Notes: a model not told the origin generated them from the letters alone. DNA of 64,000 nucleotides from IMGVR_UViG_3300029267_004162:124001-188000, one strand, 5' to 3'; counted from the stretch's first letter, positions 35,874 to 54,143 are shown. Program-made: numbers and translations.

Positions 35874-35874
35874 T

Positions 35875-39514: not shown

Positions 39515-40453
39515 TTACTCGGAAAGAAGAAGAAAAAGACCATTACGAAGGCTATCTAGATCGGGCTGAAACCGCTCTTTGACTTCTTCATCAACCCAGT
39601 TCAAAGCGCGGTGAAGCCCGTGGGAACCAGGCAGGAGATTAGCTCGACAGCGGCTGGCCAATACTCTGGCATAACCAGACGTAATATTGCTACCATCGGG
39701 CTTGGTAATGGTATCTTCGATATGCTTGGAATTACCCCCAGATAAGACAATGCTAAACGCCATTAATTGACTTCTGTTTAAACTGGCCAACGCTTTGGCG
39801 ATTTGAAGGGGGTGTGCTTCGGGCTCAGAAAGTGCCCAATCAAAATGCTTCCCCAAATGGTGTACTCGGCTAGCGAGCAGAGTTTCGAACAATTTGAAGA
39901 CGGGGACTGATTCGGATCGCCTTTGTAAAATTTGTGCCAAACCTCTTTTTTGAAGTCGGCCTTCATTCATAAAGGCGAGATAGTCCAATGCGGCCACTGC
40001 TTCAGGATATTCCCTTATCTCTGTGATAGCTTCAATAACACCATCTTCAATTTCGCAACCTAGAGCAATATACCGTTTTCGCAATCGCCGGATTAAAACA
40101 CCCCCCGATTCTCCGGTTAATTGAAAACAGGTGTACTCCGCATCCTGAGCTTCTTTAATTTTTTCCTCAGGCAACCGCATTAACAGACAGTATCCTAGTT
40201 TCGCTTCCTTTTTTGCCCATCTATCAATTTTCTTTAGGTCAAAACCAGCGAGAACGACGTGGTGATCATGAAAAATACTGGGACCATATTTACCCTCACC
40301 ATGAGTTTGGAGAGCAAAACCGTCCTCTTCTAACCCAGCCAGAAGACGAGCCCAAACGTAATCAGATACTGGGGAGATGAGGTAATAGGGTAATTCCCTC
40401 TCAGTCAAATGACGAATAAGGGCTTTTTGGCTAACCGTCTGTGGTTTAGCCAT
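39515..40453 (-). CDS. divergent DNA Pol III delta (HolA)-like clamp-loader subunit
   Basis: Size ~310 aa; helical pattern (GCEIEDGVIEAI...VFKLFETLL...HPLQIAKAL...LNWVDEEVK); a holB-like gene and a clamp-like gene are nearby. Confidence 0.55.
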   Translation of the reverse strand: MAKPQTVSQKALIRHLTERELPYYLISPVSDYVWARLLAGLEEDGFALQTHGEGKYGPSIFHDHHVVLAGFDLKKIDRWAKKEAKLGYCLLMRLPEEKIKEAQDAEYTCFQLTGESGGVLIRRLRKRYIALGCEIEDGVIEAITEIREYPEAVAALDYLAFMNEGRLQKRGLAQILQRRSESVPVFKLFETLLASRVHHLGKHFDWALSEPEAHPLQIAKALASLNRSQLMAFSIVLSGGNSKHIEDTITKPDGSNITSGYARVLASRCRANLLPGSHGLHRALNWVDEEVKERFQPDLDSLRNGLFLLLSE

Positions 40454-40976
40454 CCCCAGATTCCTCGCCTGTGTAGTATTGGACCCGCCAATACCCATAA
40501 TCTGCGGCTACTTCACATGCTTTAAATATGGGTTGGATTTTTTCACGCTCAGTGGTAAGTATCCGAGTCGTTAACACCCCGTTGGTACCCCTTCTCCGGT
40601 TCTTACGAGCTTGTAACACTTTGGACGTAGGGTCTAGCATCTCTATCTCAACTGCTGAGTTATCAACCAACCAAGTCCCGAGGTTAGAGGCAAGCCACCA
40701 TACTTGATCCACACTCCGGGGGAACCCGTCTACTGCCAAAGGTTTTTCAAGAGCAACGGCTAGTAGAACGGATTCTTTTACCAGGGAACGAACCATGTTT
40801 TCTACCTGGGGATTAGCTAGGTGTGATCCATGTTTGACGAAGAAGTCTTCTCCTAAAAGCACTCGCATCAGCTTTCCACATGACAGAACAATCGTTTCAG
40901 AATTATCGCTTTTGTGGTGATCACACCGATACGATTTTCCGCTACAGGGTAAACCAGTTATGAAGGTTAGCTGCAT
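40446..40976 (-). CDS. adenylate-kinase-like NMP kinase
   Basis: ITGLPCSGKS P-loop, LSCGKLMR, DGFPRSVDQ. Confidence 0.8.
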   Translation of the reverse strand: MQLTFITGLPCSGKSYRCDHHKSDNSETIVLSCGKLMRVLLGEDFFVKHGSHLANPQVENMVRSLVKESVLLAVALEKPLAVDGFPRSVDQVWWLASNLGTWLVDNSAVEIEMLDPTSKVLQARKNRRRGTNGVLTTRILTTEREKIQPIFKACEVAADYGYWRVQYYTGEESGDG

Positions 40977-40986
40977 CCGTCATTCC

Positions 40987-42048
40987 TTAATCCGGGAGTT
41001 GCCTAAGTTCCACTTCATCATTTTTGGGGCCTGTTCCCAGCATCCACAGTTTACACCCGTGAGCATTTAGACACTGCTGCAGTTTTTCGTAAAAAGGCTC
41101 TGGGTCTGTTAGATAATTAACGAAATTCAAAAACATGTAATTTGGACGAACGTGTTGTAGGAATCTTTCTAGTTGCAAAAAGCTGAAATCAAAGACTCTC
41201 CGTACTCGACCTGTGACGGTCGTGTACTCTTCTATTTGTTGACCAATCTTTTCACTAAGGTGCGCCCAGGTTGTTTCTTCATGGTCTGAGTAATAGGGGC
41301 CTGAGGTCGATCCTTCCAGACTACCGACTCGAATGGGATAGGTTCGAATAATTCCTACTATGTCACCATAGTAATCTGGATGGGGTGGAATACCAGCGTT
41401 ATCAAAAGCACGTCCTACCAAACAATCCCGACTGGTGGTGTAGGGGTATTGATGCCCAAAGTTAATGCCGAGATCAAATCCTTGAGCAGTTTCAGAAATC
41501 ACCGCGGCCCCTGCCAACAAAGATTCTCTGACCAGTGTGCCAGTATCAGCAACAAATTTGGCAACACGCAGATCATGTTTAGCAATATTGCTATCTTTGG
41601 GGTCGCGCCGCATCTTACGTATCACGGCTTCAGCACTACCCTGCATGGTGGAACTGATACCAGTCAGTCTTTGTTTCTCAACGTCAGCATCAGCTTGTGA
41701 CAAGACACACGCACGAGGGTGAATAGCCAGGGTGAAATCTCCCCGTTCTTTTTGGGCCGCTGCAACTTCCATTAGTAGGCGATCCACGTCAAATACAGCA
41801 TGAGGTCCAATTATCACGGTGTGGACAGTGGGGAACCATGCGCCTACTGGCAAGGCTTTAGACACATGTTTTTCGCCGGAAACTGGGCCATAAAAAGAAT
41901 GGCCTGCATTGGGCATGTTGTCCCCAACTACTACAGAAACTTGGGGATTCTGCTCGAAGATAAAGGCCAGCAATTTGCCTTTACCGGTTGATCCCCATTG
42001 CCCGTCAATAACTATTGAAAACTTGCCTGTGGGAAACATACTCATCAT
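40987..42048 (-). CDS. purZ: PurZ-type adenylosuccinate synthetase homologue (N6-succino-2-amino-2'-deoxyadenylate synthase)
   Basis: QWGSTGKG (Ser where PurA has the Asp of GDEGKG), NAGH, AQGFDL, YPYTTSR, RTYPIRV, SGPYYSD, TTVTGRVRRVF, FLNFVNY (NFxN rather than PurA TKxD); short 353-aa form. Confidence 0.85.
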   Translation of the reverse strand: MMSMFPTGKFSIVIDGQWGSTGKGKLLAFIFEQNPQVSVVVGDNMPNAGHSFYGPVSGEKHVSKALPVGAWFPTVHTVIIGPHAVFDVDRLLMEVAAAQKERGDFTLAIHPRACVLSQADADVEKQRLTGISSTMQGSAEAVIRKMRRDPKDSNIAKHDLRVAKFVADTGTLVRESLLAGAAVISETAQGFDLGINFGHQYPYTTSRDCLVGRAFDNAGIPPHPDYYGDIVGIIRTYPIRVGSLEGSTSGPYYSDHEETTWAHLSEKIGQQIEEYTTVTGRVRRVFDFSFLQLERFLQHVRPNYMFLNFVNYLTDPEPFYEKLQQCLNAHGCKLWMLGTGPKNDEVELRQLPD

Positions 42049-42699
42049 TCACCAACCTTCCTGGTCTTCTTCCGAAAAAGAATCCCCTACCCCAACATCA
42101 AAATGAATAAACGACCGGCGATGATACTCGGTCATTCCATACAAACGAAGAGCCTCAACATGACTACTGTCGTAATACCCATGATTCACATCCCACCCAT
42201 ACACGGGATGACAGGTGTGTAATGCATCCATAAAACTGTCTCTGGCGGTCTTGGCCATAATTGAGGCACAAGCAACAGCAAATTCAGATGAATCTCCTTT
42301 AATAACGCACTTATCAACCGGTGCATCACACAGGGGCCTATTGCCATCGAACACCACCAGAGTTTGATTTCCCAGTGGTGAAAGAGAAAACAATTGCCTC
42401 AAACACCGCTCGGCTGCTTTTGATATGGCGGGGTTAATCCCCTCTTTGTCAATATAGCTGGCGTCCACCATTTCAACAGAATAAGGTAGTTTATCAGCGA
42501 TCCATTGCGCTGCGTGTTGTCGTTCAGTTAGGGTCAATTCTTTGCTGTCATTTATTTGTGGAACAGATACCCCGACTTGATCCATTTTTAACAGAGTGGC
42601 TCCCACCGCCACCGGACCAGCGATAGACCCCCGGCCCGTTTCATCGACCCCAATCACAACCTCGTGGCCATCAAGCGTTTCAGTGGTAATACTCAACAC
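42049..42699 (-). CDS. rnhB: ribonuclease HII
   Basis: GVDETGRGSIAGPV, DSKEL, FDGN, IKGD...ASIMAKTARD, NHGY, HRRSF. Confidence 0.93.
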   Translation of the reverse strand: MLSITTETLDGHEVVIGVDETGRGSIAGPVAVGATLLKMDQVGVSVPQINDSKELTLTERQHAAQWIADKLPYSVEMVDASYIDKEGINPAISKAAERCLRQLFSLSPLGNQTLVVFDGNRPLCDAPVDKCVIKGDSSEFAVACASIMAKTARDSFMDALHTCHPVYGWDVNHGYYDSSHVEALRLYGMTEYHRRSFIHFDVGVGDSFSEEDQEGW

Positions 42700-43004
42700 G
42701 TGACTACCACCCTTTAGGATACTCGTATGTGCGAAACGTACCACCGTCCAGATCGTCACCCAGATCGTCGGATGAACATCGCGGGTAAACGGCCACATAT
42801 GTGTCGCCACTAGCAATCAGTCGGGTAAGCACGTCTGTGGTTACAACCGCGAAGGTGTTATCGTCGAAGCCAATCCCAAGCTCCACTACTCGCCCACCAA
42901 CACGATTCGCATGGCGATGAGCGTTATCGATGTCCTCGAAACCCACTGTCTTGAACGTGTCGTTTTTCGTCTTCGTCGTCATTTTCTTGTTATCTTGGTT
43001 CATA

Positions 43005-44027
43005 TTACCCATCCACCGCCGTAACAATTTTTCTGGCCTCATCTTTAACCACTTGAGTTTTCTCTTCGGAAAGGTCGTACCCACCCTGTTTAAGTATGTC
43101 TTCTATCCCACTCAAAGGGTCTTCTACAGTCGCCGATTGGATTTCAATGTCTGTTTTAACAGCGGTGGTTTCCACTTTTGTGACCCTCTTATCTTCACCT
43201 AGGTCAATTGTTACGCCTTGTTTGACCTTGACTTTCACGGTGTAAGAAGGGGGAATTTCGGCCAAGCGACTATTTAGTTGATCTTGAGTCTCTACCTCTA
43301 TGGTTATAAGTGGATAGTCCTGGGGAATGTTAACTGGTTTTGCTTTAGGACCGGATTTCGTCCACTTGACCAGTAAGTAACCCCGCTTAAGAGACTTCTC
43401 TCCAAATTTGGTTTGATAGGCAGACCCCGGATAAGCAGCATTGTTTATTCGCTGTCTAGAGTGGAAATCTCCCAACGCGATATAGGGAATAGAAGAATAG
43501 GGGGATAAATCCAGCCCCCGGTAGGATTTCACCCCATTGTCATACGCCCCACCTTTTACATCAGCATGAATCACCAAGATATCGGGGTCTTCACCCACCA
43601 AATCCGAGACACATTCATTGCGGTGCCCCGGAACGACCGCGACCTTTAACCCCCACAAATCATACACCTTGGGGTCATTTACGAGTATGACATTCGAAAG
43701 CTTACCCTGAAGAGGACGCAAATGATCCAAAACCGTCGTAGTGGGGTTCTGTTGATCATGGTTTCCCGGAATAATGATGCAAGGCACACCAAGAGTGTCT
43801 AATTCCAGAAGAAAACGAATTACCGCCCCGATTTCTTCTGGAGTGGGGTTTTTAGTGTGCCACAGATCCCCAGCAGAAATTACTCCGTCAACTCCTTTTG
43901 AACGAAAGGATTCTACTAGCCTATCGCAAGCGGATACTGTCCGATCCAGATAAGAGAATTCGCCCCCCATTGAGAATAAACCTTTCCCGGATCCGAAATG
44001 CTGGTCAGCACAGTGAGCTATTAACAT
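43005..44027 (-). CDS. sbcD: SbcD/Mre11-like nuclease
   Basis: ADQH, AGDLWH, PGNHD, IHA, ALGDFH, YPGS...FGE. Confidence 0.88.
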   Translation of the reverse strand: MLIAHCADQHFGSGKGLFSMGGEFSYLDRTVSACDRLVESFRSKGVDGVISAGDLWHTKNPTPEEIGAVIRFLLELDTLGVPCIIIPGNHDQQNPTTTVLDHLRPLQGKLSNVILVNDPKVYDLWGLKVAVVPGHRNECVSDLVGEDPDILVIHADVKGGAYDNGVKSYRGLDLSPYSSIPYIALGDFHSRQRINNAAYPGSAYQTKFGEKSLKRGYLLVKWTKSGPKAKPVNIPQDYPLITIEVETQDQLNSRLAEIPPSYTVKVKVKQGVTIDLGEDKRVTKVETTAVKTDIEIQSATVEDPLSGIEDILKQGGYDLSEEKTQVVKDEARKIVTAVDG

Positions 44028-44419
44028 TGTTCCGGAACCCACTTCATGTCTTGCCATCGATATACAACCAAACTGGATTCACCTTCTAATTTCAAGATGA
44101 CCGAATTTGGCTGGGTTTCTATGGGGGTGACCTCCAACATATGCTGCAAGGAGGGGTTGGGCCCGTGCCACATACCAAATTCTCCTGGCTTATGCTCGCA
44201 CCCTATCGCGTACACACATTCGTGAGGAGGATCACTAGTACGAAAACTAACCGCTTGTTCAAACTCTTGAACCGCCCTAAGAGGAACTCTATTTATAACA
44301 GTTCTCGCTAAACAGGCATCAACAGTTTGACCCCCAGCACCTGATTGGCTACGAGGACATTTGGCAAGAATGGTGAGAAATTTAGTTGCTGCTTCTAAGA
44401 GATTGGACATGATCATCAC
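44021..44419 (-). CDS. hypothetical protein
   Basis: Packed ORF. Confidence 0.5.
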   Translation of the reverse strand: MMIMSNLLEAATKFLTILAKCPRSQSGAGGQTVDACLARTVINRVPLRAVQEFEQAVSFRTSDPPHECVYAIGCEHKPGEFGMWHGPNPSLQHMLEVTPIETQPNSVILKLEGESSLVVYRWQDMKWVPEQC

Positions 44420-44885: not shown

Positions 44886-44898
44886 ACTAATCTCCGAT

Positions 44899-45669
44899 TC
44901 ACTTTATCATTCGAACGATGGGGTAATCATCATGGATTATTGATGATGTAATTTGACAAAGAGAAGACCAAGATAAAACATGCGACTCACTGAACCCAGC
45001 GTGTTTAGCCATTTTTACCAATTCCCCCGGACTAAAAACACCCAGCTTAATTGCCTCGGATGTCTTGTGCAGGTTTTTCCCAACCCGAGTGTTATCAGAG
45101 GCAATACTCATGAAAGCAGAAGTAGCATTGGATACCCAGTCTATATCTAACCCTGACAATTTAATGGACGCTTTGATATCTTTCCGCGACCTACTCCAGG
45201 AATAATTCTGAAGCGCGTGTAAACGAAGGTACCCATCGTAGATATGACCAAAATATACCAGATACGATCCTCCCTTACGTAAAGCGGCGTGCACTTTACG
45301 TAAATGTTTAACCATAGCGGATACGGTGGGGAGTTTGTATTGCATCAACAGGATATTCGTCGTAATGGCTAAATTTATCCCTTGTGGACTTTCCCCTGGT
45401 TCCAATATTTCAACAGAAAAATGGTCAAAGATGCCCTCTTCTGCCCACTTATAATGCACATATTCGGAAGCCTGTAAACAAGAGGGAGTTAAACTAGCCT
45501 TACCCAATTCCCGGTAAAGAACATCTTTAGTATAATCCCCAGTAACCGATATAACTTCCCAGACACTACTCGGGGTTAAACTAGATGCCGCCAAAAGTTT
45601 ATCAGTCACCTCAGGAATGGAAGCGTGATCGACAAACAACAATTCGTAAGTGTCGGGGCACCGATCCAT
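44899..45669 (-). CDS. degenerate class I methyltransferase-like protein
   Basis: VWEVISVTG at the motif I position; HLRKVHAALRKGGSYLV; FSPGELVKMAKHAGFS. Confidence 0.55.
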   Translation of the reverse strand: MDRCPDTYELLFVDHASIPEVTDKLLAASSLTPSSVWEVISVTGDYTKDVLYRELGKASLTPSCLQASEYVHYKWAEEGIFDHFSVEILEPGESPQGINLAITTNILLMQYKLPTVSAMVKHLRKVHAALRKGGSYLVYFGHIYDGYLRLHALQNYSWSRSRKDIKASIKLSGLDIDWVSNATSAFMSIASDNTRVGKNLHKTSEAIKLGVFSPGELVKMAKHAGFSESHVLSWSSLCQITSSIIHDDYPIVRMIK

Positions 45670-46283
45670 TAAAGCAATGACCCCCTAGTCGAACTAACTC
45701 GTTCGATAAATTCCGCTTTAACATGACCCTCTACGAAAGCCCCCAAAACAGTAGTGGTGGTTATTCGAGACGTGGGACTTTGCACTCCTCGACAACTCAT
45801 GCAATTATGCATTGCCTCTACCATCACAGCGGTTCCCCTTGCATGAACACTATTGTGTAAGGTCGTGGCTAGCTCATAGGTGTAGGATTCTTGCAGGATG
45901 GGCTGCTTAGCCATAGTAGTCGCGAGGCGAGTTAGTTTACTAATACCCAGTATTCGGAATTCTTGCCTTTCTGCGGCTGGAACGTAGGCTATGTGAACCA
46001 AAGCCATAACCGGAAGAAGGTGGTGGGGACACATAAAATTCACGATATTTTGCGTACTGCAAATCATTGCATCATACACCCCGTTTCCTTGATCTGGGAA
46101 TGAACAAGAAAGAATTTTGGCGACTTCTTTATTGATCTGATCTTTCGACCACACCATTTCATGCAGGGCTTTAGCAGCTCGCGAATCAGTACCTTTGAAG
46201 TTATATCCGGAGTGGCCCATCTCGGCTAAACCTTCTAGGATTAGCGCGTACCCCGTTTGAAATTTGTCTTCGTTTGATGACAT
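45669..46283 (-). CDS. folE: GTP cyclohydrolase I
   Basis: MCPHHLLP, GISKLTRL, LQESYT, HNCMSCRGV; Zn ligands intact. Confidence 0.93.
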   Translation of the reverse strand: MSSNEDKFQTGYALILEGLAEMGHSGYNFKGTDSRAAKALHEMVWSKDQINKEVAKILSCSFPDQGNGVYDAMICSTQNIVNFMCPHHLLPVMALVHIAYVPAAERQEFRILGISKLTRLATTMAKQPILQESYTYELATTLHNSVHARGTAVMVEAMHNCMSCRGVQSPTSRITTTTVLGAFVEGHVKAEFIERVSSTRGSLL

Positions 46284-46285
46284 AA

Positions 46286-47557
46286 TTATCCTTTAACCTC
46301 AGTCGTGGCCACGATTAAATTGGCAGAGCCATCTTCAGCAAACACCATTCTACCGTCAGAACGAAGTCGAAGAGTCTTGTCTACTACCAACGTTGAACCC
46401 GCCTTTAGCACGAGATCCCACGCTGTACGATTAGTCCGCATCGTTTCTCTGTAGTTTTTACACCCCTTAACTACAGTGTCGGCAGCTTTTTTCTTGGGTT
46501 CTTCTTTTTCCGTCTTTTTGCCAGGCTTCTTAATGGGTTCCTTGTCTATTTCCACCTTTTCAGTAGCGGCAAAGCTTTCCCCAACCTTTCCCAAATTCAG
46601 GCTAGACCTAGCCTGGGAATCTTCGGCAAAGAGAGAAAACACTTTTTCTTCTCGACGCAGTTCAATGGCTGGGTCCCCCGGTAAACAACTACACGCCATG
46701 TTGATAGCAGTGGCCATACTGGGGCAGAATACTACCAGATCATTTTTGCCTTTAAACTTCTTATCATTACGACGCTTCATGATTGATTGCACGTCTTTGA
46801 ACCGATCCGATTCAGGAAGAGCGTGCACAATTTTCCACCGATCAGTGTGGATAGCCACGCAAGAATCTTCTTCTTCACTGGAAAGAAGCAGTTTGATTTT
46901 TGACCCCTTCCCACCACGAATCAAATGAGGCCACGTTGCTAACCAATCAGCCGGAACCAAAATTTGACCCTTGCCAAGGGTCTTTGATAAATGAACCCGG
47001 CGGAAAAAGGCACTATGAGAATCAGTTGCCTCGATAGTGATTTCCTTGCCGTTTATGCTGATTCTAACTAATGAATCAGGGCTAAACGTAGTGATAGATT
47101 CAGCGAATGTACACGCTGATGGAATTGATCCAATTAACTCAGTGGCCGATTCAATTGGAATCACCAATTCTTGTGGCTCAGAAACCTTTAACCTATTCCA
47201 ACTTTCATCGCCGCCTTGACCTACCTCTCGCGTGTACTGCTTATTGCGAATGGTAAGTGTTGTATCATCAGTGGCTCGGAATTCGTAATTCCCCGCCATA
47301 TCAGGCAAGGACTGAATAAAGGACCCGTCGATTACGATAGGGGTCATGTCTTTTGATAACCAGTCGACTTCATTCGGCTTTAGGACTGTCTTTCCATAAG
47401 CCTTCTCTCCAACCATTTCGATTACCAACCATCTGCCATCTTTCTTTTTCAAGACAGAGAACCGAGTATTAATAGTGACGGTACCAGCCACCGAGACGGT
47501 TCGAGAAAGGATCGACATGATTGACTTGATCAGTGCAGTTTCTACTGTAAATTCCAC
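46286..47557 (-). CDS. divergent DNA polymerase sliding clamp (DnaN-like)
   Basis: MEFTVET...LSRTVS N-terminus; ITIEATDSHS (cf. VATDGHRL); ~420 aa; replication context. Confidence 0.55.
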   Translation of the reverse strand: MEFTVETALIKSIMSILSRTVSVAGTVTINTRFSVLKKKDGRWLVIEMVGEKAYGKTVLKPNEVDWLSKDMTPIVIDGSFIQSLPDMAGNYEFRATDDTTLTIRNKQYTREVGQGGDESWNRLKVSEPQELVIPIESATELIGSIPSACTFAESITTFSPDSLVRISINGKEITIEATDSHSAFFRRVHLSKTLGKGQILVPADWLATWPHLIRGGKGSKIKLLLSSEEEDSCVAIHTDRWKIVHALPESDRFKDVQSIMKRRNDKKFKGKNDLVVFCPSMATAINMACSCLPGDPAIELRREEKVFSLFAEDSQARSSLNLGKVGESFAATEKVEIDKEPIKKPGKKTEKEEPKKKAADTVVKGCKNYRETMRTNRTAWDLVLKAGSTLVVDKTLRLRSDGRMVFAEDGSANLIVATTEVKG

Positions 47558-47744: not shown

Positions 47745-48266
47745 TTATCCTATCAACTGGGAAAACCCAAATTCATCATCGGGCTCGGACTCATCAGATT
47801 TACCTAACTCATAATCCATCAGGCCATTTTCTATTGATGTGATTTCACAGTGCTCTCCCTGGTAAATAACGACATCCCCCCTCTTCTTCCCCAAAAGCGT
47901 TTGACCAAAGGGAGATTCATAACTTATCACGCCCCCATCGGGGTTGGAGTCAAACGGCCCCAGTACCCTAAAGACAATCGTTTTTGATCCCTTGAAAGTG
48001 ACCTTTGAACCAACCCCCACAACATCGGTTGGAACCTCTGCTTCATCAAGAGGCACAGCCGCAGACAACGATGTTTGTAAATCCTGGAGTCTCTTGGAAA
48101 GAAAATCTCGTTCTTCTATGGCGAATTTCCATTCAGAGTTTTCACTCAGATCTCCGTGTTCAGCCGCTTCACCAATCCTTTTAATCACCGCAGGAAGATC
48201 AACCATTTGCATCTTCTCAGCAAGCAATAACTTGGCATCGATTGCTTGCGTACTATGATAACTCAT
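47745..48266 (-). CDS. greA: transcription elongation factor GreA/GreB
   Basis: HGDLSENSEW (acidic tip intact), VGVGSKV, ISYESPFGQTLLGKKRGD. Confidence 0.9.
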   Translation of the reverse strand: MSYHSTQAIDAKLLLAEKMQMVDLPAVIKRIGEAAEHGDLSENSEWKFAIEERDFLSKRLQDLQTSLSAAVPLDEAEVPTDVVGVGSKVTFKGSKTIVFRVLGPFDSNPDGGVISYESPFGQTLLGKKRGDVVIYQGEHCEITSIENGLMDYELGKSDESEPDDEFGFSQLIG

Positions 48267-48853
48267 TTGGACTCCGTCACTTGAGGAGACAAAGTGAGTT
48301 TCCAATCTCCAAGAGGGAGTTCTACTTGACCATCGTAATCAGGAAAACCTGGGGAAGGGCCATCACCACATTCCCATATATCTGATAACCCCCGATATTT
48401 GCCTTTCAGGTCCATCCCAAACCCAATCACGAACTTGCCCGAAACATCAAGACTAGAGTAATTACCAACATGCCCTGACTTCTTCGTGTCCAGTAAGAAA
48501 CACGCGTCTGCATCTCGAAATCCAAAATCCGCTAGCATGGTCAGAATCTTATCATAAGTCTCGCCTGTGTTTATGATGGCATCAATTACTAGCACAGAAT
48601 AATCGGCTGGGTTGCTTGGCGGTTCCCAATCGTGTGCAATGGTTACCCCACGATCAGCAGAATAAGTAGCCGTCCAAACCGGACGAATTATCATGTCAAT
48701 TCGCAAAGTCCTGAATAGTTCCATTACAAAGAGACTGGCGCCCCACAAGACCGGAACTACAACCACCTTTTCTCCACGGTAGGCATCGTTTATTTGATTG
48801 GCGATTGTATCGATGTGAGTGACAATGTCTCTATGTTCTAGAAATTTTTTCAT
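48263..48853 (-). CDS. HPRT-like phosphoribosyltransferase, paralogue B (altered PRPP loop)
   Basis: VLWGASLF, VLVIDAIINTGET, FVIGFGMDLKGKYRGL. Confidence 0.85.
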   Translation of the reverse strand: MKKFLEHRDIVTHIDTIANQINDAYRGEKVVVVPVLWGASLFVMELFRTLRIDMIIRPVWTATYSADRGVTIAHDWEPPSNPADYSVLVIDAIINTGETYDKILTMLADFGFRDADACFLLDTKKSGHVGNYSSLDVSGKFVIGFGMDLKGKYRGLSDIWECGDGPSPGFPDYDGQVELPLGDWKLTLSPQVTESK

Positions 48854-49377
48854 GACCTTTCATCCTGACCCTTACATTCTTCGATTATGCATATGTCTGG
48901 TAAGCCCCGATATCTACCACCCATGTCCAATCCAAACCCTACTACAAATTTATCCGGGATAACAAATCCAGTATAATTTGGGCAACGGCTAGATTTCTCT
49001 TTGTCCAACAAAAAACACGTTCTTGTGTCGTGAAACCCGGAACCTTTCAACAAAGACACTACGCCATTGATGGTTTTACCAGAGTCCAAAATGTCGTCTA
49101 CTATTAACGCCGAACAGGCGGCGGGATCTATTTGGGATAAATCCCAATCATGTTTGATAGATAAATTACCCTGAGAAGTCCCAGAATAAGAAGTAGCCCA
49201 TATTGGAAGAATAGTCACGGTAGTTTTTAAACGATTAAATAGCTCCATCGAAAAAGTGCAAGCACCCCACAAAACGGGAACAACTATTAGTCTTCGGCCC
49301 TCAAAGTCTGAGTCAATCTGACTAGCTAATTGATCGATACGAACAAGAATCTGCTGGTGTTCCAATAGTTTTTTCAA
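48850..49377 (-). CDS. hpt: hypoxanthine/guanine phosphoribosyltransferase, paralogue A
   Basis: VLWGACTF, ATSYSG, LIVDDILDSGKT, FVVGFGLDMGGRYRGLP. Confidence 0.9.
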   Translation of the reverse strand: MKKLLEHQQILVRIDQLASQIDSDFEGRRLIVVPVLWGACTFSMELFNRLKTTVTILPIWATSYSGTSQGNLSIKHDWDLSQIDPAACSALIVDDILDSGKTINGVVSLLKGSGFHDTRTCFLLDKEKSSRCPNYTGFVIPDKFVVGFGLDMGGRYRGLPDICIIEECKGQDERS

Positions 49378-49389
49378 TTTTACCCTCGG

Positions 49390-50334
49390 TTATTTATGAA
49401 ACCCAATCTGAGGGGCTTCATCTCCTGGAGCTATATCCAATAGAGTGTCTCTACAAGCGGTTAAATTCTGCCAAGCCAAATGAAACACTTCTCGGCCAAC
49501 TGATTGAGCATTCTCAGTTGTATCCACATGAGCCATGAACCGATCAAAATCACCCAGCAAAGAGTATTGTTTTATCGGTGATTTAAAATCTTTCTTACTT
49601 AGTTTAACCAATTTCCAGTTGGTTTTTGCCCGAGGGACAAAAGCAAGTAGAGCCTCTCTGGCTTTGGCTGTCATGGCCCCTTTCGATTCCTCAGATTTCA
49701 ACCAAGCAATTGATTCCTTCATCTTCTTAAATGGGGCGATCAACAAAGGAGCGATCTTCTTACGGTGTAAACGGGGTACACCCGGTATGCCATCACTAGA
49801 ATCCCCGAACCAAGATTTGTACATGGCGATTTGGCGAGCTTTTACTCCAAACGTGTCTTGACAATCCTTACGAGAGACCAGCCCTGACGATCGCAAGTCC
49901 CAGATTCGAATCCAACGATTGTCTAACAATTGCCACAAATCTCGATCACCCGTTAGGATGTTGACTTCCCAATCAGGTAAAGACAGTGCCATCCAAGCCA
50001 ACACATCATCGGCTTCTTCGCCCTCTGCCCACAGATAAGACTGTGGAACCCATTGTAACAGGGGATCCAGCGCCGTCCAAACTTCTGGGGCTTCCTCTTT
50101 AGCACGATCAGCCTTGTATGTTGCATCGATAGATCTTTTCCTATCAGGTCGAGTATCCAAAACAAAGAAGATATTGGTTCTGTCAGTGTATATCTTCTTG
50201 AGCAACCGGAGTAAGATCCATTTCCAGTTTACGTAGTTTTCACCCGGAGGCCCTGCCTGACATTTGTATACCACTGGACTCATATCCACTAAAGTGATGA
50301 TTTGTTCATCAAATAGAGAAGGCTGGTTAGTCAT
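49390..50334 (-). CDS. 5'-3' exonuclease / flap endonuclease (PolI N-terminal-like)
   Basis: LVD, YKADR, EADD, TGDRDLWQL, GDSSDGIPGVP. Confidence 0.9.
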   Translation of the reverse strand: MTNQPSLFDEQIITLVDMSPVVYKCQAGPPGENYVNWKWILLRLLKKIYTDRTNIFFVLDTRPDRKRSIDATYKADRAKEEAPEVWTALDPLLQWVPQSYLWAEGEEADDVLAWMALSLPDWEVNILTGDRDLWQLLDNRWIRIWDLRSSGLVSRKDCQDTFGVKARQIAMYKSWFGDSSDGIPGVPRLHRKKIAPLLIAPFKKMKESIAWLKSEESKGAMTAKAREALLAFVPRAKTNWKLVKLSKKDFKSPIKQYSLLGDFDRFMAHVDTTENAQSVGREVFHLAWQNLTACRDTLLDIAPGDEAPQIGFHK

Positions 50335-51295
50335 CAGTCGATTCCTCCGCCTTGGTAAATACTTCCTCTGAAACAGCGATAAAGGCACTTTCCATGAACA
50401 GTTGAAGGTTCCTATGGGGACATCGGCTGAGTTGAATTTCACGAGCCTCCAGTATGATCTGGATGATCCGAGCTATGCCATAGGTTCCCCACTGTTCGAA
50501 GACGGCTGGAGCCCATTTTCCCTTGATCCTAAACTGATTAAGAATCATGGATAGGTGTTCAACGCAAATAGCGGTGGTAAGATTGAATTCCTCTTGCAGG
50601 GCGGTGCAGAATTGACTTTGTTCCCAAAATCCAGCAGGACGGATCTGCCATAAGAATTTCAGGATGTTCTCCCCCATCTGGTATAGCTCATCTGGTTCAG
50701 TAGATAAAACCGCCCCCATGTTGTTACCCACCAACTTTAGACACTTGGCGATAACATCTTCTTCTGCGTCTGGGTAACGGAGCTTAACCAAGGCGGTTAA
50801 ATCATCATGACTGGGCGTGTTGAATCGAACTGTTACAGAGCGGGATAGAATAGTTCCCAGCAGATAGTCTAAATCCGGTACTATCAGAATGATAGTCAAA
50901 CGCCCAGGGGGTTCTTCCAGAGTCTTGAGCAGGCCCGGTAGGATTGAGTTATTGCCCTTGCTGGGGGCACTAAGAAAATCCACGACATGGAATTTGTGAT
51001 TTGAAATGATGGGCCTGAAATTATCGCCCTTGACGAAAGCCGAAACCTCCCGAGGAAGCATCGAACCAATTTCATACTCCAACCATTTTACATCTGGGTG
51101 TTCTTTCCCCGTTTCTAACAGCCATCGAGATTTGGGGTCTCCCAGAACCTCCCACATGTATTCTAGGGCGGCAGTAGCTTTCCCCACCTTCCGAGGACCA
51201 ACCAGGATTAGGCAATTAGGTGGTTTTTTAGTAAGAGCCATCAATTGTTTGATAGCCCGTGAATTACCTATGAAATCAGAAAAGGCTTTAACCAT
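50327..51295 (-). CDS. holB: DNA Pol III delta-prime (HolB)-like clamp-loader subunit
   Basis: FIGN, GPRKVGK, HPDV, LLKTLEEPP, LLGTILSRS. Confidence 0.8.
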   Translation of the reverse strand: MVKAFSDFIGNSRAIKQLMALTKKPPNCLILVGPRKVGKATAALEYMWEVLGDPKSRWLLETGKEHPDVKWLEYEIGSMLPREVSAFVKGDNFRPIISNHKFHVVDFLSAPSKGNNSILPGLLKTLEEPPGRLTIILIVPDLDYLLGTILSRSVTVRFNTPSHDDLTALVKLRYPDAEEDVIAKCLKLVGNNMGAVLSTEPDELYQMGENILKFLWQIRPAGFWEQSQFCTALQEEFNLTTAICVEHLSMILNQFRIKGKWAPAVFEQWGTYGIARIIQIILEAREIQLSRCPHRNLQLFMESAFIAVSEEVFTKAEESTDD

Positions 51296-51329
51296 AACAC
51301 GCCTTAATTACCTGGTGTTTACCATGTCT

Positions 51330-51371
51330 AAATATAATAACGAGGCCCAAGGAGAGTATCCTTGAGCCTCG
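51330..51371 (-). terminator. intrinsic terminator
   Basis: Minus strand CGAGGCTCAAGGA-TACTC-TCCTTGGGCCTCG-TTATTATATTT. Confidence 0.7.
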
Positions 51372-51397
51372 CAGGAGGGGGAGGGGAAGGGGTTTGG

Positions 51398-51847: not shown

Positions 51848-51850
51848 CGC

Positions 51851-52168
51851 TTACCCCAATCTCGAAAGAAGTTGAACAGCCATAAAGAACCCCGCAATCC
51901 AGTTCTCACCAGCAATACTCTCAGCCATTTTTTTGTTGGCCTCTATGATTTCTTGTTTGGTAATCGGGGTGTAGGTCTTCTTGTAACTGTCAATTGCTGG
52001 AGCCCCATAGTCGGGGCCAGAAGAGGGCTGCTCAGGTAGCTGAACTTCAATGTCGTTCCTAGCCATCACCTCAACAAAGATACTGGCCTTTTCCACGAAC
52101 TCGCGGACAGCCTTAGCTACTTCCGCATTGGACTTTAGTGTTGCTTCAGACAACGGTTGGGGCATCAT
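51851..52168 (-). CDS. hypothetical protein
   Basis: GAGAGG RBS; ATGA overlap. Confidence 0.55.
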   Translation of the reverse strand: MMPQPLSEATLKSNAEVAKAVREFVEKASIFVEVMARNDIEVQLPEQPSSGPDYGAPAIDSYKKTYTPITKQEIIEANKKMAESIAGENWIAGFFMAVQLLSRLG

Positions 52169-52674
52169 ACACCTCTCGTTTCAATCATAGGATCATCCCC
52201 TCGAATAAAAGGATCAACCGAATAACAATACGAGGCAGTATCCCGGAACAAGCTGAGTTTTTCTTCGAAGCTCCAGACCTCTACTTCTTTTCCTCTAGCT
52301 CGAACCCGTGCAAACAGATCGGAAAAAGTTGTCAAACCAGTCACTATCGCCAGGACATCGAACATAGGTAACGATTCAATTACATCAAGAACTATACTCA
52401 CGTTCCACGCCGTGTAATCTCTTGTGGTTTTAGTTTGAACGTCAAACCCGGATTGATTCAGCATAAAGGCGAACTTCTTTATGTTCTTTCCTGGCTCCTC
52501 TACGGCGTAGTAAGAGGCCCTCTGTAAGGTTCTAGCACCACGAATATGAGACAATAGAGCTTCATAATCCAAAAGCTTCTGACCGTTAAATATGCCAGAC
52601 CCATCCACGATTACCAGAAGCTTTTTACTATCATTCAAACGACCTTGAATAATTTGCGAAATTTGCTTATCCAT
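52165..52674 (-). CDS. NYN/LabA (DUF88)-like domain protein, catalytic Asp residues degenerate
   Basis: VIVDGSGI, LDYEALL, WNVSIVLD, IVTGLTTF (cf. SGDGDF), RARGKEVEV. Confidence 0.7.
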   Translation of the reverse strand: MDKQISQIIQGRLNDSKKLLVIVDGSGIFNGQKLLDYEALLSHIRGARTLQRASYYAVEEPGKNIKKFAFMLNQSGFDVQTKTTRDYTAWNVSIVLDVIESLPMFDVLAIVTGLTTFSDLFARVRARGKEVEVWSFEEKLSLFRDTASYCYSVDPFIRGDDPMIETRGV

Positions 52675-52733
52675 TTATTGTTCTCCAGTTAAAACTTTAT
52701 ACCTCTTTGTAGAGCCCCGATCCAAATAGGCAT

Positions 52734-54143
52734 TTAGTCTATTTCTGGAAAAACCACCCCTTCTGTGTCTCCTTCTTTTCGTTTCCCTTTTTGGCCACCA
52801 TATCTGGCCAAAGGAGATCTAGTAGTCACCTTTTCATCAGCATCCCCCAGACGGCTTTCACCACAATCAGTAACGCGCATAATACTAAAATCAGCCCGTA
52901 GTGGAAACTGAAACTTCTCTATATTCCTGCCCTTATCGATCTGACAATCAAAGGTCTGAATCGGATCATATATCCCTTCCTCTTCATCCGTTGCGTCACC
53001 TTCACTCTGAAGAACCCAGGTCAACATAATGTCACAGTGTTCACGAACTGCCCGACTATAACGAATCTGTTGCTGCTTTTCATCATATTGTGCCGCGACA
53101 ACAACCACGATCTTCTGGTCCATGGCCAGGATTTTCAATTCTCGGGCTATATCGCCTAGCTGCTGCCATAAGGATTCATCTGCCCCGCCTCCGGTCATCA
53201 TATTCAGGTAGTCAATAAACACAACCTTGTACCCGCCCACCATCACATCAGATAGAATGTCGATCACTTTTAGATTTGGGGTGTTTTTAACCCAGAAGAT
53301 AGAATCCTTCCTGCTCCTATCCTCCGATGCTCCCTTGATGGTCTCAACTATCGTTTCCCTAATCTCATCATCCCATTTCTTTGACGACCGCAACTGACTG
53401 AAGGGGACTTGAGCTAGATTAGCCAAACACCTGCGATAAACTTGACCCTTGTCCAATTCCAGGGATTGAAACAACACCGGTACTTTCTTAGACATATTCA
53501 GGGCCATCTGGATCATGACGGTGGTCTTCCCCTGATTAGATGGAGCAGCAATCACCACCATATCTCCGGGTTGAAAACCCCCGACTCTTTCATCAAACCC
53601 AGTGAAACCAGTTGGCACCAATAAAGTTTCTTCTGAATGTAGAAACCTCATTATCTCTTCATGGGAAATGCCTTTACCAAAACCAATCCCATCATCTCTC
53701 CGGTTCATCATTGTGGAGAGTTCTTGACACGCCAAATAAGACTGGCCCAAAGCCTCATCGGGGGTGGATTGTTCCTCAGCTAAATCCCGCCAAATGTCTT
53801 TGAAACGATTAGCTATTTCAGATCGGTGATAATCCGACAAGATGGCAGTTGTGATATCCTTTACCACCCCATCAGAATCAATGATAGTGAAGTTGGCTAA
53901 CGATTCTAAATAAGCCGCCTGATCATCTGGGAGATTTCTTCCTGCTGTCGCTGGGATGATACTGATATCAATGTCCCGATCACCCAAGACCATTTTTGAC
54001 AGAATGTCCCACACCGGTCTGATGTGGATTATGGCTTCCGAAGGAACCATCTTCAGCACATAAGCCTTGTGCGCTTTACTCCCAAAGGCTAGCACTCCCG
54101 CTAACCTCAATTCCCTTTCCATCGCTTTTAGATCAGCAGACAT
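52734..54143 (-). CDS. dnaB: replicative DnaB-like helicase
   Basis: PTGF...GGFQPGD, AAPSNQGKT, SLEL, FIDYL, ARELKILA, AAQ, KGRN. Confidence 0.9.
   Translation of the reverse strand: MSADLKAMERELRLAGVLAFGSKAHKAYVLKMVPSEAIIHIRPVWDILSKMVLGDRDIDISIIPATAGRNLPDDQAAYLESLANFTIIDSDGVVKDITTAILSDYHRSEIANRFKDIWRDLAEEQSTPDEALGQSYLACQELSTMMNRRDDGIGFGKGISHEEIMRFLHSEETLLVPTGFTGFDERVGGFQPGDMVVIAAPSNQGKTTVMIQMALNMSKKVPVLFQSLELDKGQVYRRCLANLAQVPFSQLRSSKKWDDEIRETIVETIKGASEDRSRKDSIFWVKNTPNLKVIDILSDVMVGGYKVVFIDYLNMMTGGGADESLWQQLGDIARELKILAMDQKIVVVVAAQYDEKQQQIRYSRAVREHCDIMLTWVLQSEGDATDEEEGIYDPIQTFDCQIDKGRNIEKFQFPLRADFSIMRVTDCGESRLGDADEKVTTRSPLARYGGQKGKRKEGDTEGVVFPEID

What the first reader, a model, noticed from the sequence alone, without database searches (positions are those of the whole stretch)
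39515..54143. Bacterial Pol III-style replisome surrounding purZ
Seen: HolA-like, HolB-like, DnaN-like, DnaB, 5'-3' exonuclease and RNase HII genes flank purZ. The exonuclease begins MTNQPSLF, resembling the beta-clamp-binding consensus QL[S/D]LF. Inference: the replicase is probably a C-family (DnaE) enzyme encoded outside the window. If the DNA contains Z, that would differ from the family-A DpoZ or PrimPol-encoding Z-phages.
Basis: partly seen in the sequence, partly recalled or inferred. Interest (0 to 1): 0.6.

Follow-up and report, generated by a model that had tools for sequence, protein, structure and literature searches.

The report
Jumbo phage clamp replisome around purZ
A 263-kb uncultured phage carries the gene for making the adenine substitute 2-aminoadenine among bacterial-style sliding-clamp and clamp-loader genes.

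Summary
The gene list is real. On the minus strand of 39515-54143 lie a delta-like protein, an NMP-kinase-like protein, PurZ, RNase HII, SbcD, FolE and a very divergent beta-clamp homologue. They are followed by a Gre factor, two phosphoribosyltransferases, a 5'-3' exonuclease, a delta'-like protein and DnaB. The exonuclease starts MTNQPSLF behind a good Shine-Dalgarno site.

The whole 262,650-bp genome (CheckV 100%) gave no match to the DnaE, PolB or PrimPol models searched. It has one family A polymerase, fused to a UDG-like domain, which is not of the DpoZ clade.

Outside the window lie a DnaX (gamma) ATPase, a DnaG-type primase and a second, canonical beta clamp 4.4 kb upstream of the polymerase. 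Six other large phages with DnaX-like loaders also have PolA and no DnaE. The replisome type therefore already exists in databases, though I found no biochemistry on it.

New here:
- purZ in a jumbo phage. It has the Ser-for-Asp13 signature and is PurZ type, not PurZ0.
- No detectable DatZ, MazZ, DUF550 or DpoZ.
- Two clamp paralogues.
- A modelled clamp-exonuclease contact (score 0.65, best control 0.00).
- A complete preQ0 pathway.

Whether the DNA contains Z is untested.

The parts
39515..40453 (-). Clamp-loader delta-like subunit (HolA-like), 312 aa, no P-loop
   Evidence: No Pfam, PHROG or NCBIfam hit. ESM Atlas features 0.95 to PF21694/PF06144 clusters; TM 0.52-0.61 to bacterial delta clusters. 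Only remote relative is P0004 (E 1.9e-8, 25% identity), which carries a weak PF21694 hit. AF2 model is poor (pLDDT 49), but nearly all of Foldseek's top 50 are clamp-loader subunits, including 1jr3_D. VIA Z 9-11 for residues 114-180 against the AAA+ lid domain. No GxxxxGK[ST] motif.
40446..40976 (-). P-loop nucleoside-monophosphate-kinase-like protein directly downstream of purZ
   Evidence: Weak ADK and AAA_17 hits (4e-4; NCBIfam adk 3e-5), Walker A GLPCSGKS. A role as dZMP/dGMP kinase is inference only.
40987..42048 (-). PurZ (succino-2-amino-deoxyadenylate synthase), PurZ subgroup
   Evidence: NCBIfam PurZ 214 bits against PurA 117 bits; phrog_1211 2e-58. 37.7% identity to the characterised phiVC8 PurZ. 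P-loop reads GS-TGKG, with Ser where PurA has Asp13, and has the TVT motif. The criterion is from PMC12884076. Lies on the PurZ side of a 10-sequence tree.
42049..42816 (-). RNase HII (start codon uncertain; the domain begins about residue 50)
   Evidence: Pfam RNase_HII 2e-22; NCBIfam 1.1e-48.
43005..44057 (-). SbcD-like nuclease
   Evidence: Metallophos 5e-10; phrog_100 SbcD-like 4.2e-38. The SbcC partner is at 59621-61984.
45669..46283 (-). GTP cyclohydrolase I (FolE), first step of the preQ0 pathway
   Evidence: Pfam 1.3e-33; phrog_2197 1.6e-36. QueD, QueE and QueC lie elsewhere in the genome.
46286..47557 (-). Highly divergent beta-sliding-clamp paralogue, 423 aa, with a Lys-rich insertion at about residues 335-362
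   Evidence: Atlas structure TM 0.76/0.85 to a beta-clamp cluster. phrog_947 5.6e-4. pLDDT 76-79 in the ESMFold2 complex runs, with the partner peptide in the domain II / C-terminal cleft. No sequence relatives anywhere.
47745..48305 (-). GreA/GreB-family transcript cleavage factor homologue
   Evidence: GreA_GreB 2.3e-15 and GreA_GreB_N 7e-13.
48263..49377 (-). Two tandem phosphoribosyltransferases (196 and 175 aa)
   Evidence: Pribosyltran 4.5e-12 and 3.5e-18; no PHROG hit. A role in purine salvage is inferred.
49390..50334 (-). 5'-3' exonuclease / flap endonuclease with an N-terminal clamp-binding-like motif (residues 4-8, QPSLF)
   Evidence: 5_3_exonuc_N 5.3e-13 and SAM-fold domain 2.2e-7; phrog_107 1.6e-18; NCBIfam Pol I N-terminal region 6.8e-25. 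SD GGAGGA lies 8 nt before the ATG. Complex model 0.65 against control 0.00.
50327..51295 (-). Clamp-loader delta'-like subunit (HolB-like)
   Evidence: DNA_pol3_delta2 2.4e-13; holB TIGR00678 7.3e-19; phrog_5846 1.8e-13. The sequence shows GPRKVGKAT, VVDF (no Walker B Glu) and SRS.
52734..54143 (-). DnaB-family replicative helicase
   Evidence: DnaB_C 7.6e-31; TIGR00665 2.8e-30.
36056..36538 (-). dUTPase-family protein; the only candidate found for a dNTP-clearing enzyme
   Evidence: PF00692 9.3e-23; phrog_135 4.1e-37. Best tblastn hits are canonical enterobacterial Dut at 39% identity.
21482..23356 (-). NAD-dependent DNA ligase (LigA type)
   Evidence: DNA_ligase_aden 2.7e-44, OB, HHH and BRCT domains.

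Best explanation
The region is the core replication and purine-metabolism module of a complete 262.65-kb jumbo phage.

The replisome is not Pol III based. It is of the type 'family A polymerase plus bacterial-type beta clamp plus DnaX-complex clamp loader', which also occurs in other large phages. Its parts are:
- DnaB helicase (in the window).
- A DnaG-type primase (genome about 240.3-241.3 kb).
- A single UDG-like/3'-5' exo/PolA polymerase (genome 215.4-218.3 kb).
- A clamp loader, presumably gamma3-delta-delta' by analogy with E. coli. It would be built from a DnaX ATPase (genome 111.6-112.7 kb) with the delta' and delta genes of the window.
- Two beta-clamp homologues: a canonical one 4.4 kb upstream of the polymerase and a very divergent one in the window.
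- For lagging-strand maturation, a flap endonuclease that probably docks in the clamp's hydrophobic cleft through its N-terminal QPSLF, RNase HII, and an NAD-dependent ligase.

purZ, embedded here, most likely converts dGMP to the precursor of dZMP, so that dZTP is available to the polymerase.

Shown: gene identities, absence of matches to the DnaE, PolB and PrimPol models searched, the PurZ signature.
Inferred: subunit stoichiometry, which clamp serves which enzyme, and that Z actually enters the DNA. No known dATP-clearing enzyme or DpoZ was detected, so substitution may be partial or may use an unknown mechanism.
For: - Genome scope and completeness. The clamp and delta proteins also occur on other contigs, the longest 262,526 and 262,650 bp.
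- No DnaE or PolB match. No PrimPol match.
- One PolA with UDG, exo and pol domains. Motifs A, B, C and Exo I-III read intact in the translation.
- DnaX: dnaX_nterm 8.2e-68; Walker A, zinc module, Walker B DE and Ser-Arg motif present; 362 aa, so gamma length.
- Primase.
- Canonical clamp: PF02767 1.7e-10, TIGR00663 1.2e-25, phrog_947 1.9e-23.
- Divergent clamp and delta.
- Clamp-exonuclease model: median score 0.65, best of 3 controls 0.00. That mark was reached by 51 of 78 solved complexes and 2 of 108 mismatched pairs. Runs agree in at least 74% of contacts; partner pLDDT is at least 45. Exonuclease residues 3-8 contact clamp 178-183 and 417-421.
- Comparators: Flasso, GR7B, pEa_SNUABM_5, PaBG, Nodularia kac65v151 and PhiXhv-12 all have a DnaX-like loader and PolA, with no DnaE; PolB was tested and not found in the last five. 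Those five, tested for phrog_947, all have such a clamp, within about 1-2.5 kb of PolA in four.
- PurZ.
Against: - The window clamp and delta have no family-level sequence hit. An HMM I built from six phage clamps did not find the window clamp (E 2.7) and instead picked up the second one.
- AF2 models were poor: pLDDT 33 and 49. Fold evidence therefore rests mainly on ESM-based models.
- The complex pass may reflect memory of solved beta-peptide complexes.
- No test was run of whether PolA binds either clamp.
- Four large ORFs remain unannotated (genome 234798-237536 and 118652-121294; window 12883-14841 and 6147-8066). A very divergent polymerase cannot be formally excluded.
- For Z: DatZ, MazG, HD, DUF550, DUF5664 and DpoZ were not detected. 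The controls for DUF550 and DUF5664 rang in no genome, so those two absences are weak.
Confidence: 0.65

Rival explanations
1. One reading: the replicase is a Pol III alpha (DnaE/PolC). It is either phage-encoded but too divergent to detect, or it is the host's enzyme, recruited by the phage clamp and loader. The PolA would then serve only in gap filling and repair.
For: All accessory proteins are of Pol III holoenzyme type. The clamp cleft looks canonical and could accept a host alpha motif. Four large ORFs have no annotation.
Against: No candidate at all for PF07733 or PF17657, while the controls rang in all 10 bacterial control genomes. The DnaX is gamma length, with no room for the tau C-terminal domains that bind alpha and DnaB in E. 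coli (the tau function is from established knowledge). Six comparator phages with the same loader lack DnaE and have PolA, and their clamp gene lies close to PolA in four of five tested. In this genome too, the canonical clamp lies 4.4 kb upstream of PolA on the same strand.
Confidence: 0.08
2. purZ does not give a fully Z-substituted genome here. The phage makes some dZTP (partial substitution), or uses PurZ to manipulate purine pools, because the A-excluding helpers are missing.
For: No DatZ (PF12917, PF01966, phmmer with phiVC8 DatZ), no MazG, no DUF550 or DUF5664, no DpoZ. Per PMC12884076, PurZ-type genomes mostly carry DatZ plus MazZ-2 or DUF550, and all 98 PurZ0 genomes carry dutZ. The S-2L triad paper's title and abstract point to the need for helpers beside PurZ (PMC8342488; listing only, not read). 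The only dUTPase looks canonical.
Against: The PurZ signature residues are intact, so the enzyme looks functional. Dut-family enzymes can hydrolyse dATP and dGTP in Z-phages, and a Dut gene lies 4.5 kb from purZ. Host DNA degradation could supply dGMP without MazZ (inference). Divergent, unrecognised helpers are possible in a genome where many ORFs are unannotated.
Confidence: 0.35
3. The divergent clamp in the window is not a replicative processivity ring. It is a specialised paralogue. It could be a platform dedicated to the flap endonuclease, ligase and repair; a partner in a heterodimer with the canonical clamp; or a clamp-derived non-ring subunit like PhiKZ Rhc.
For: A canonical DnaN sits 4.4 kb upstream of PolA, as clamps lie close to PolA in related phages. 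The two paralogues share no detectable sequence similarity. The window copy has a Lys-rich insertion. It lies beside the exonuclease, delta and delta' genes, and the exonuclease motif docks on it in the model. PhiKZ shows that clamp-derived domains can act as single subunits (PMC13648687).
Against: The Atlas model superposes on a full three-domain beta clamp over 361 residues, which fits an ordinary ring-forming protomer. No experiment or model distinguishes the roles of the two clamps.
Confidence: 0.3

Closest known systems
Group 3.1 jumbo phages of Iyer et al. 2021 (PMC7824862) and sequenced relatives: PaBG, Erwinia pEa_SNUABM_5 and Yoloswag-like phages, Vibrio GR7B, Xanthomonas PhiXhv-12, Nodularia kac65v151
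   Same: Family A polymerase, standard DnaB and a clamp loader, with no DnaE or PolB. All carry a phrog_947 beta-like clamp. The PolA of this phage is 25-29% identical to those of Yoloswag, AD1 and Motura; its DnaX is 30-40% identical to theirs.
   Different: Those genomes are not among the purZ hits shown. The 75 rows listed out of 203 matching records were all 83 kb or smaller. Here delta and delta' are also recognisable and there are two clamp paralogues. The 2021 review still stated that no clamp was detectable in this group.
Bacillus phage Flasso (MZ357961), annotated with Pol III beta, gamma/tau, delta' and delta
   Same: A full bacterial-type clamp and loader set together with a PolA and no DnaE.
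   Different: 108 kb, not jumbo, and no purZ seen in the region inspected. Its clamp and delta show no pairwise similarity to the window proteins. It has one annotated clamp.
E. coli DnaX complex (gamma3-delta-delta') and beta clamp
   Same: Same subunit families. DnaX has Walker A and B, a zinc module and a Ser-Arg motif. The delta' has a degenerate Walker B. The delta lacks a P-loop. The clamp cleft accepts a QL[SD]LF-type peptide.
   Different: No alpha, epsilon, tau, chi or psi was identified. The polymerase partner would be family A. The phage proteins fall far below the equivalog cut-offs.
Z-genome phages phiVC8 (PurZ, DatZ, DpoZ) and S-2L (PurZ, DatZ, MazZ, PrimPol)
   Same: PurZ with Ser in place of PurA Asp13, of PurZ type, 32-39% identical.
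   Different: Genome five to six times larger. No DatZ, MazZ, DUF550, DpoZ or PrimPol detected. The polymerase is a UDG-PolA that may be clamp-assisted.
UDG-fused family A polymerases: SPO1, SP-10, SP-15, and the N4-like cluster 17 (PMC10201439)
   Same: N-terminal family 4 UDG-like domain, then 3'-5' exo, then pol. SP-10 and Nachito are among the best hits covering most of the query.
   Different: Those phages carry modified uracil or unmodified DNA, not purZ. The paper's text mentions a clamp only once, in its reference list.
PhiKZ Rhc, a clamp-derived processivity subunit fused to RNase H (PMC13648687)
   Same: A jumbo-phage replisome in which a divergent clamp-related protein went unrecognised and is linked to an RNA/flap-removing nuclease.
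   Different: Rhc is a single subunit bound to a split B-family polymerase. Here the protein is a full three-domain beta homologue with a dedicated loader, and the nuclease is a separate gene.

Membership tests
PurZ (2-amino-adenylosuccinate synthetase) | Catalytic Asp13 of PurA replaced by Ser (100% of 147 phage PurZ sequences, PMC12884076) | tested here: met
   The alignment shows GS-TGKG where the PurA control has GDEGKG. Criterion read.
PurZ (2-amino-adenylosuccinate synthetase) | Scores better on the PurZ model than on PurA, and reaches the curated cut-off | tested here: inconclusive
   NF038379 gives 214 bits against PurA 117 bits, but the curated cut-off is 300.
PurZ subgroup rather than PurZ0 | Groups with phiVC8, S-2L and SH-Ab 15497 rather than the Wayne and Ghobes type | tested here: met
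   P-loop reads STGKG as in PurZ, not SEAKG as in PurZ0. tblastn gives 1e-37 to 1e-57 against PurZ types and about 1e-13 against PurZ0. A 10-sequence FastTree places it on the PurZ side, on a long branch.
PurZ (2-amino-adenylosuccinate synthetase) | Uses dGMP + Asp + (d)ATP | not testable with these tools
   Needs an enzyme assay.
Known Z-genome gene set | dATP/dGTP-clearing partner (DatZ; MazZ or DUF550; or DutZ/DmtZ) | tested here: not met
   PF12917, PF01966, PF03819, PF04447 and PF18909 found nothing, and phmmer with phiVC8 DatZ found nothing. The PF04447 and PF18909 controls rang nowhere. One Dut-family gene exists, but its closest hits are canonical Dut.
DpoZ | Membership of either DpoZ clade of family A polymerases | tested here: not met
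   DpoZ_1 79 bits (cut-off 500) and DpoZ_2 23 bits (cut-off 350), against Pol I 221 bits. phiVC8 DpoZ gives E 1.3e-4.
Bacterial Pol III holoenzyme | Alpha catalytic subunit (DnaE/PolC) | tested here: not met
   PF07733 and PF17657 gave zero candidates in the complete genome.
Bacterial Pol III holoenzyme | DnaX ATPase with Walker A/B, zinc module and Ser-Arg motif | tested here: met
   Genome 111649-112737: TIGR02397 8.2e-68, 229 bits (just under the 250 cut-off); motifs read.
Beta sliding clamp (DnaN), window copy | Three-domain beta-clamp fold | tested here: met
   Atlas model TM 0.76/0.85 over 361 residues to a cluster that is 100% PF00712/PF02767. My own AF2 model failed.
Beta sliding clamp (DnaN), window copy | Recognised by DnaN sequence models | tested here: not met
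   No Pfam or NCBIfam hit; phrog_947 only 5.6e-4; my six-clamp HMM gave E 2.7. The second copy, at genome 209691-210944, is recognised.
Beta sliding clamp (DnaN), window copy | Hydrophobic cleft between domain II and the C-terminus binds QL[SD]LF-type peptides | tested here: inconclusive
   The model supports binding: 0.65 against control 0.00, with contacts at clamp 178-183 and 417-421. This is a prediction and may reflect memory of solved complexes.
Clamp-loader delta (HolA) | AAA+-like three-domain subunit without a P-loop; PF06144/PF21694 | tested here: inconclusive
   No direct Pfam hit. Atlas features and structure point to delta only. The one relative has a weak PF21694 hit. The lid domain matches clamp-loader subunits at Z 9-11. 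No Walker A.
Clamp-loader delta' (HolB) | DNA_pol3_delta2 fold, defective ATPase site, Ser-Arg motif | tested here: met
   PF13177 2.4e-13. Best NCBIfam model is holB at 68 bits, far below its cut-off of 180.6. VVDF replaces the Walker B DE; SRS is present.
Clamp-binding motif | Consensus QL[SD]LF at a protein terminus (consensus recalled from the literature) | tested here: met
   Residues 4-8 read QPSLF, matching four of five consensus positions. It is the only Q-x-[SD]-L-F in the ORF set.

The most novel reading that the evidence does not exclude
This jumbo phage really replaces adenine by 2-aminoadenine, and perhaps also modifies guanine through its complete preQ0 pathway. It would do so with a clamp-assisted UDG-fused family A polymerase outside both DpoZ clades and with none of the known dATP-clearing enzymes. 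That would imply an undescribed way of excluding adenine. It would also mean a two-clamp replisome in which a highly divergent beta paralogue is dedicated to the flap endonuclease.
Probability: 0.15. Interest if true: 0.85.

Novelty: new variant of a known kind. Interest (0 to 1): 0.58.

Why it matters
All Z-genome phages described so far are small siphoviruses or podoviruses. Their purZ travels with DatZ, MazZ or DutZ and with DpoZ or PrimPol. A jumbo phage with an intact purZ and none of these helpers offers two possibilities. It may be a natural case of partial substitution, or it may point to a new adenine-exclusion mechanism. The UDG-PolA, the Dut-family protein, the kinase and the two phosphoribosyltransferases beside purZ are the candidates.

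Separately, the locus gives a concrete parts list for the little-studied phage replisome of family A polymerase plus beta clamp plus DnaX complex. A 2021 comparative survey of jumbo phages reported that no clamp was detectable in this group. The locus also gives a testable clamp-binding peptide on the flap endonuclease. Family A polymerases are usually thought of as clamp-independent, so biochemical proof of clamp use would interest replication specialists.

Tried and rejected
- megablast of the whole region against phages found no match.
- tblastn, the word search and the IMG/VR scan with the window clamp found only itself, plus one 100% identical contig.
- The word search and the exhaustive 1.84-billion-protein search with the delta-like protein found itself plus one remote relative. 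A word search from that relative added nothing.
- phmmer or a two-sequence profile against PDB sequences gave nothing useful for the clamp or the delta-like protein.
- AF2 on the clamp alone (pLDDT 33) and on delta with two sequences (pLDDT 49) gave poor models. The clamp model was discarded. The delta model was used only as weak support.
- Pairwise BLASTP of the window clamp and delta against their Flasso counterparts, and of the two clamps of this genome against each other, gave nothing.
- An HMM from six phage clamps did not recover the window clamp, but it revealed the second clamp. A first version of that script picked a wrong-strand ORF for PaBG and was redone.
- DNA-level 7-deazaguanine insertion: the TGT/DpdA family gave only an 11-bit hit, and that ORF has no PHROG hit. 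This was left open.
- The 1455-aa ORF is tail-lysin/tape-measure-like, not a polymerase.

Full report
**Scope.** The window is bases 124001-188000 of a 262,650-bp IMG/VR virus record that CheckV rates 100% complete. The clamp and delta proteins also occur on other contigs, the longest being 262,526 and 262,650 bp. Absences can therefore be judged on essentially the whole genome. I laid the genome out, called 332 ORFs (83,019 residues) and fetched the parts outside the window as loci.

**The observation.** All genes of the finding are on the minus strand.
- Family scans confirm purZ (40987-42048), RNase HII (42049-42816), a 5'-3' exonuclease (49390-50334), a DNA_pol3_delta2 protein whose best model is holB delta' (50327-51295), and DnaB (52734-54143).
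- Between them lie an SbcD-like nuclease, GTP cyclohydrolase I, a GreA/GreB homologue, two phosphoribosyltransferases, an NYN-domain protein and a weakly ADK-like P-loop kinase directly downstream of purZ.
- The exonuclease does begin MTNQPSLF. The ATG at 50334 is preceded by GGAGGA at 8 nt and overlaps the delta' stop codon. The alternative upstream GTG would overlap delta' by 116 nt.

**The two divergent ORFs.** Neither 39515-40453 nor 46286-47557 has a Pfam or NCBIfam hit. The clamp candidate has only a weak phrog_947 hit (5.6e-4). Both are near-orphans in sequence space.
- The clamp has no relative in the phage collection, in 5.8 billion protein clusters or in IMG/VR, apart from a 100% identical contig.
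- The delta candidate has one remote relative among 1.84 billion representatives (E 1.9e-8, 25% identity). That relative carries a weak DNA_pol3_delta_C hit.

- The ESM Atlas model of the clamp candidate (pTM 0.72) superposes on a bacterial beta-clamp cluster at TM 0.76/0.85 over 361 residues. Its feature neighbours (0.96) are viral DnaN-like clusters.
- The delta candidate's neighbours (0.95) carry PF21694 or PF06144, and its structural matches (TM 0.52-0.61) are all delta clusters.
- My AF2 models were poor, at pLDDT 33 and 49. Even so, Foldseek's top 50 for the delta model are almost all clamp-loader subunits, including E. coli delta 1jr3_D. VIA-align gives Z 9-11 (rmsd 1.4-2.7 over about 65 residues) for residues 114-180 against the AAA+ lid domain of gamma, RFC and delta.
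- The protein has no P-loop. It shares an invariant Ile-Phe at residues 60-61 with its one relative. From memory, E. coli delta inserts Leu73-Phe74 into beta at a comparable place. That is a lead, not a test.

**The replicase.**
- The genome has no candidate for DNA_pol3_alpha or DNA_pol3_finger, none for family B and none for PrimPol. Positive controls rang in the expected genomes.
- It has exactly one family A polymerase, at genome 215357-218284 (+). The ORF is 975 aa, with a probable start at Met23. It consists of a family 4 UDG-like domain, a 3'-5' exonuclease and a pol domain.
- It scores 221 bits on the Pol I model, but only 79 and 23 bits on the two DpoZ models (cut-offs 500 and 350). 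phiVC8 DpoZ gives E 1.3e-4. Klenow-type structures are its best PDB sequence matches.
- UDG-PolA fusions are known from SPO1, SP-10, SP-15 and N4-like phages (PMC10201439). SP-10 and Nachito are among its best hits covering most of the query, at about 25% identity. Jumbo phages Yoloswag, AD1 and Motura follow at 25-29%.

**The rest of the replisome.**
- A true DnaX lies at genome 111649-112737 (-). It scores dnaX_nterm 8.2e-68 and phrog_5846 9e-53. It has Walker A, the Cys4 zinc module, Walker B DE, sensor 1 and a Ser-Arg motif. At 362 aa it is gamma length.
- The delta'-like protein keeps GK in its P-loop but has VVDF instead of a Walker B acid pair, plus SRS. This fits an inactive stator subunit.
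- A DnaG-type primase is at genome 240317-241300.
- NAD-dependent ligase, GyrB, SbcC, RecA, a UvrD-type helicase and ribonucleotide reductase are also present.

**A second clamp.** Searching with clamps of other phages revealed a second clamp at genome 209691-210944 (+), 4.4 kb upstream of the polymerase on the same strand. Unlike the window copy it is sequence-detectable: DNA_pol3_beta_2 1.7e-10, TIGR00663 1.2e-25, phrog_947 1.9e-23. The two clamps show no pairwise similarity.

**How unusual is the replisome?** Not unique.
- DnaX-like loaders occur in 227 phage records.
- I tested six of them: Flasso, GR7B, pEa_SNUABM_5, PaBG, Nodularia kac65v151 and PhiXhv-12. None has DnaE, and all have a PolA. 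The last five were also tested for PolB and have none.
- Those same five were tested for phrog_947, and all have such a clamp. In PaBG, pEa_SNUABM_5, GR7B and PhiXhv-12 it lies within about 1-2.5 kb of the polymerase match.
- Flasso is already annotated with beta, gamma/tau, delta' and delta.
- Iyer et al. [quoted passage not shown] PHROGs has since labelled the clamp family.

The type is therefore known at the annotation level. My literature searches found no biochemistry on it.

**The clamp-binding motif.** Q-x-[SD]-L-F occurs once in the ORF set, at residues 4-8 of the exonuclease. About one such motif is expected by chance (my estimate), so the position matters rather than the count.

The controlled complex test used the window clamp plus exonuclease residues 1-40.
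- The median score was 0.65, against 0.00 for the best of three controls.
- That mark was reached by 51 of 78 solved complexes and 2 of 108 mismatched pairs.
- The runs agree in at least 74% of contacts. The partner's pLDDT is at least 45, so its own fold is uncertain.
- Residues N3-F8 contact clamp residues 178-183 (TDSHSA, which sits where E. coli beta has its TDGHRL pocket strand; recalled from memory) and the C-terminal residues 417-421.

This shows likeness to solved beta-peptide complexes. It does not prove binding. The polymerase has an internal QLFLDI in the linker between the UDG and exonuclease domains.

**purZ and the Z question.** The protein carries the defining Ser in place of PurA Asp13 and the PurZ-type P-loop (STGKG), not the PurZ0 type (SEAKG) (criterion from PMC12884076). 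It scores 214 bits on the PurZ model against 117 on PurA. It is 32-39% identical to phiVC8, ZP6, the Ochrobactrum phage, S-2L and SH-Ab 15497 PurZ, and falls on the PurZ side of a small tree.

The usual partners were not found:
- No DatZ, by the YfbR-like model, the HD model, or phmmer with phiVC8 DatZ.
- No MazG.
- No DUF550 or DUF5664. The controls for these two rang in no genome, so these absences are weak.
- No DpoZ.

A Dut-family gene lies 4.5 kb from purZ. Dut-like enzymes clear dATP and dGTP in PurZ0 phages. This one, however, resembles canonical Dut most closely. I therefore rate 'makes dZTP' as likely, and 'fully Z-substituted genome' as open.

**Verdict.** The Pol III-core inference is refuted. 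The accessory-subunit reading is right. The combination is a new variant of two known kinds: a PolA/clamp/DnaX jumbo-phage replisome, and a purZ phage. The combination consists of purZ in a jumbo phage without the known helpers, a non-DpoZ UDG-PolA, two clamp paralogues and a clamp-binding flap endonuclease. A complete preQ0 pathway in the same genome adds a possible second purine modification (FolE in the window; QueD, QueE and QueC outside it).

**Limits.** The fold evidence comes from language-model predictions. Four large ORFs remain unannotated.

Noticed in passing
outside the window: genome 209691-210944 (+), = L009:5691-6944: A second, canonical beta-clamp gene lies 4.4 kb upstream of the UDG-PolA. 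The genome therefore has two clamp paralogues with no detectable similarity to each other.
   Followed up: yes
window 45669-46283 (FolE); outside: QueD genome 210941-211393, QueE 192320-193108, QueC 106049-106822, and a QueC-like ORF at 102482-103216: A complete preQ0 (7-deazaguanine) pathway sits in the same genome as purZ. No TGT/DpdA was detected (11-bit hit only), so whether DNA, tRNA or neither is modified is open. I found no paper dealing with purZ together with this pathway.
   Followed up: partly
window 16348-17850 (-) and 35421-35933 (-): A phage-encoded PAS/HisKA/HATPase sensor histidine kinase and a separate response-regulator receiver protein, that is, a possible two-component system.
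   Followed up: no
window 47745-48305 (-): A GreA/GreB transcript-cleavage-factor homologue sits among the replication genes.
   Followed up: no
window 48263-48853 and 48850-49377 (-): Two tandem, overlapping phosphoribosyltransferase paralogues without PHROG matches lie between the Gre factor and the exonuclease. They may take part in purine-base salvage that feeds PurZ.
   Followed up: no
window 36056-36538 (-): A dUTPase-family gene next to GyrB. It is the only candidate found for a dATP/dGTP-clearing role by analogy with DutZ, but it is closest to canonical Dut.
   Followed up: partly
outside the window: residues 242-247 of the 975-aa PolA ORF (L009:11357-14284): QLFLDI, which resembles the hexapeptide clamp-binding motif, lies in the linker between the UDG-like and exonuclease domains. 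It is untested. The N-terminus of the polymerase is Arg/Gly-rich.
   Followed up: no
window 46286-47557, protein residues about 335-362: A Lys- and Glu-rich insertion in domain III of the divergent clamp, not aligned to bacterial clamps.
   Followed up: no
window 20392-20465 and 28256-28330 (-): tRNA-Met (CAT) and tRNA-Leu (TAA) genes.
   Followed up: no
window 25574-26815 (-); window 770-2947 (-): A protein with a discoidin-receptor DS-like / F5_F8 type C domain, and a 725-aa protein with two glycosyltransferase domains.
   Followed up: no
window 12883-14841 and 6147-8066; genome 234798-237536 and 118652-121294: Four ORFs of 639-912 aa with no Pfam or PHROG match. The two outside the window also have no PDB-sequence match. 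The 912-aa ORF sits between an SNF2 helicase and an XPD-like helicase.
   Followed up: partly
outside the window: genome 212637-213092, 213074-215029 and 219632-220708: A macro-domain protein and a UvrD-type helicase lie immediately upstream of the polymerase, and an RNA ligase lies downstream.
   Followed up: no
L014 (IMGVR_UViG_3300017989_006421, 93.6 kb): A second IMG/VR contig encodes a clamp 100% identical to the window's. No diverged relative of this phage was found.
   Followed up: partly
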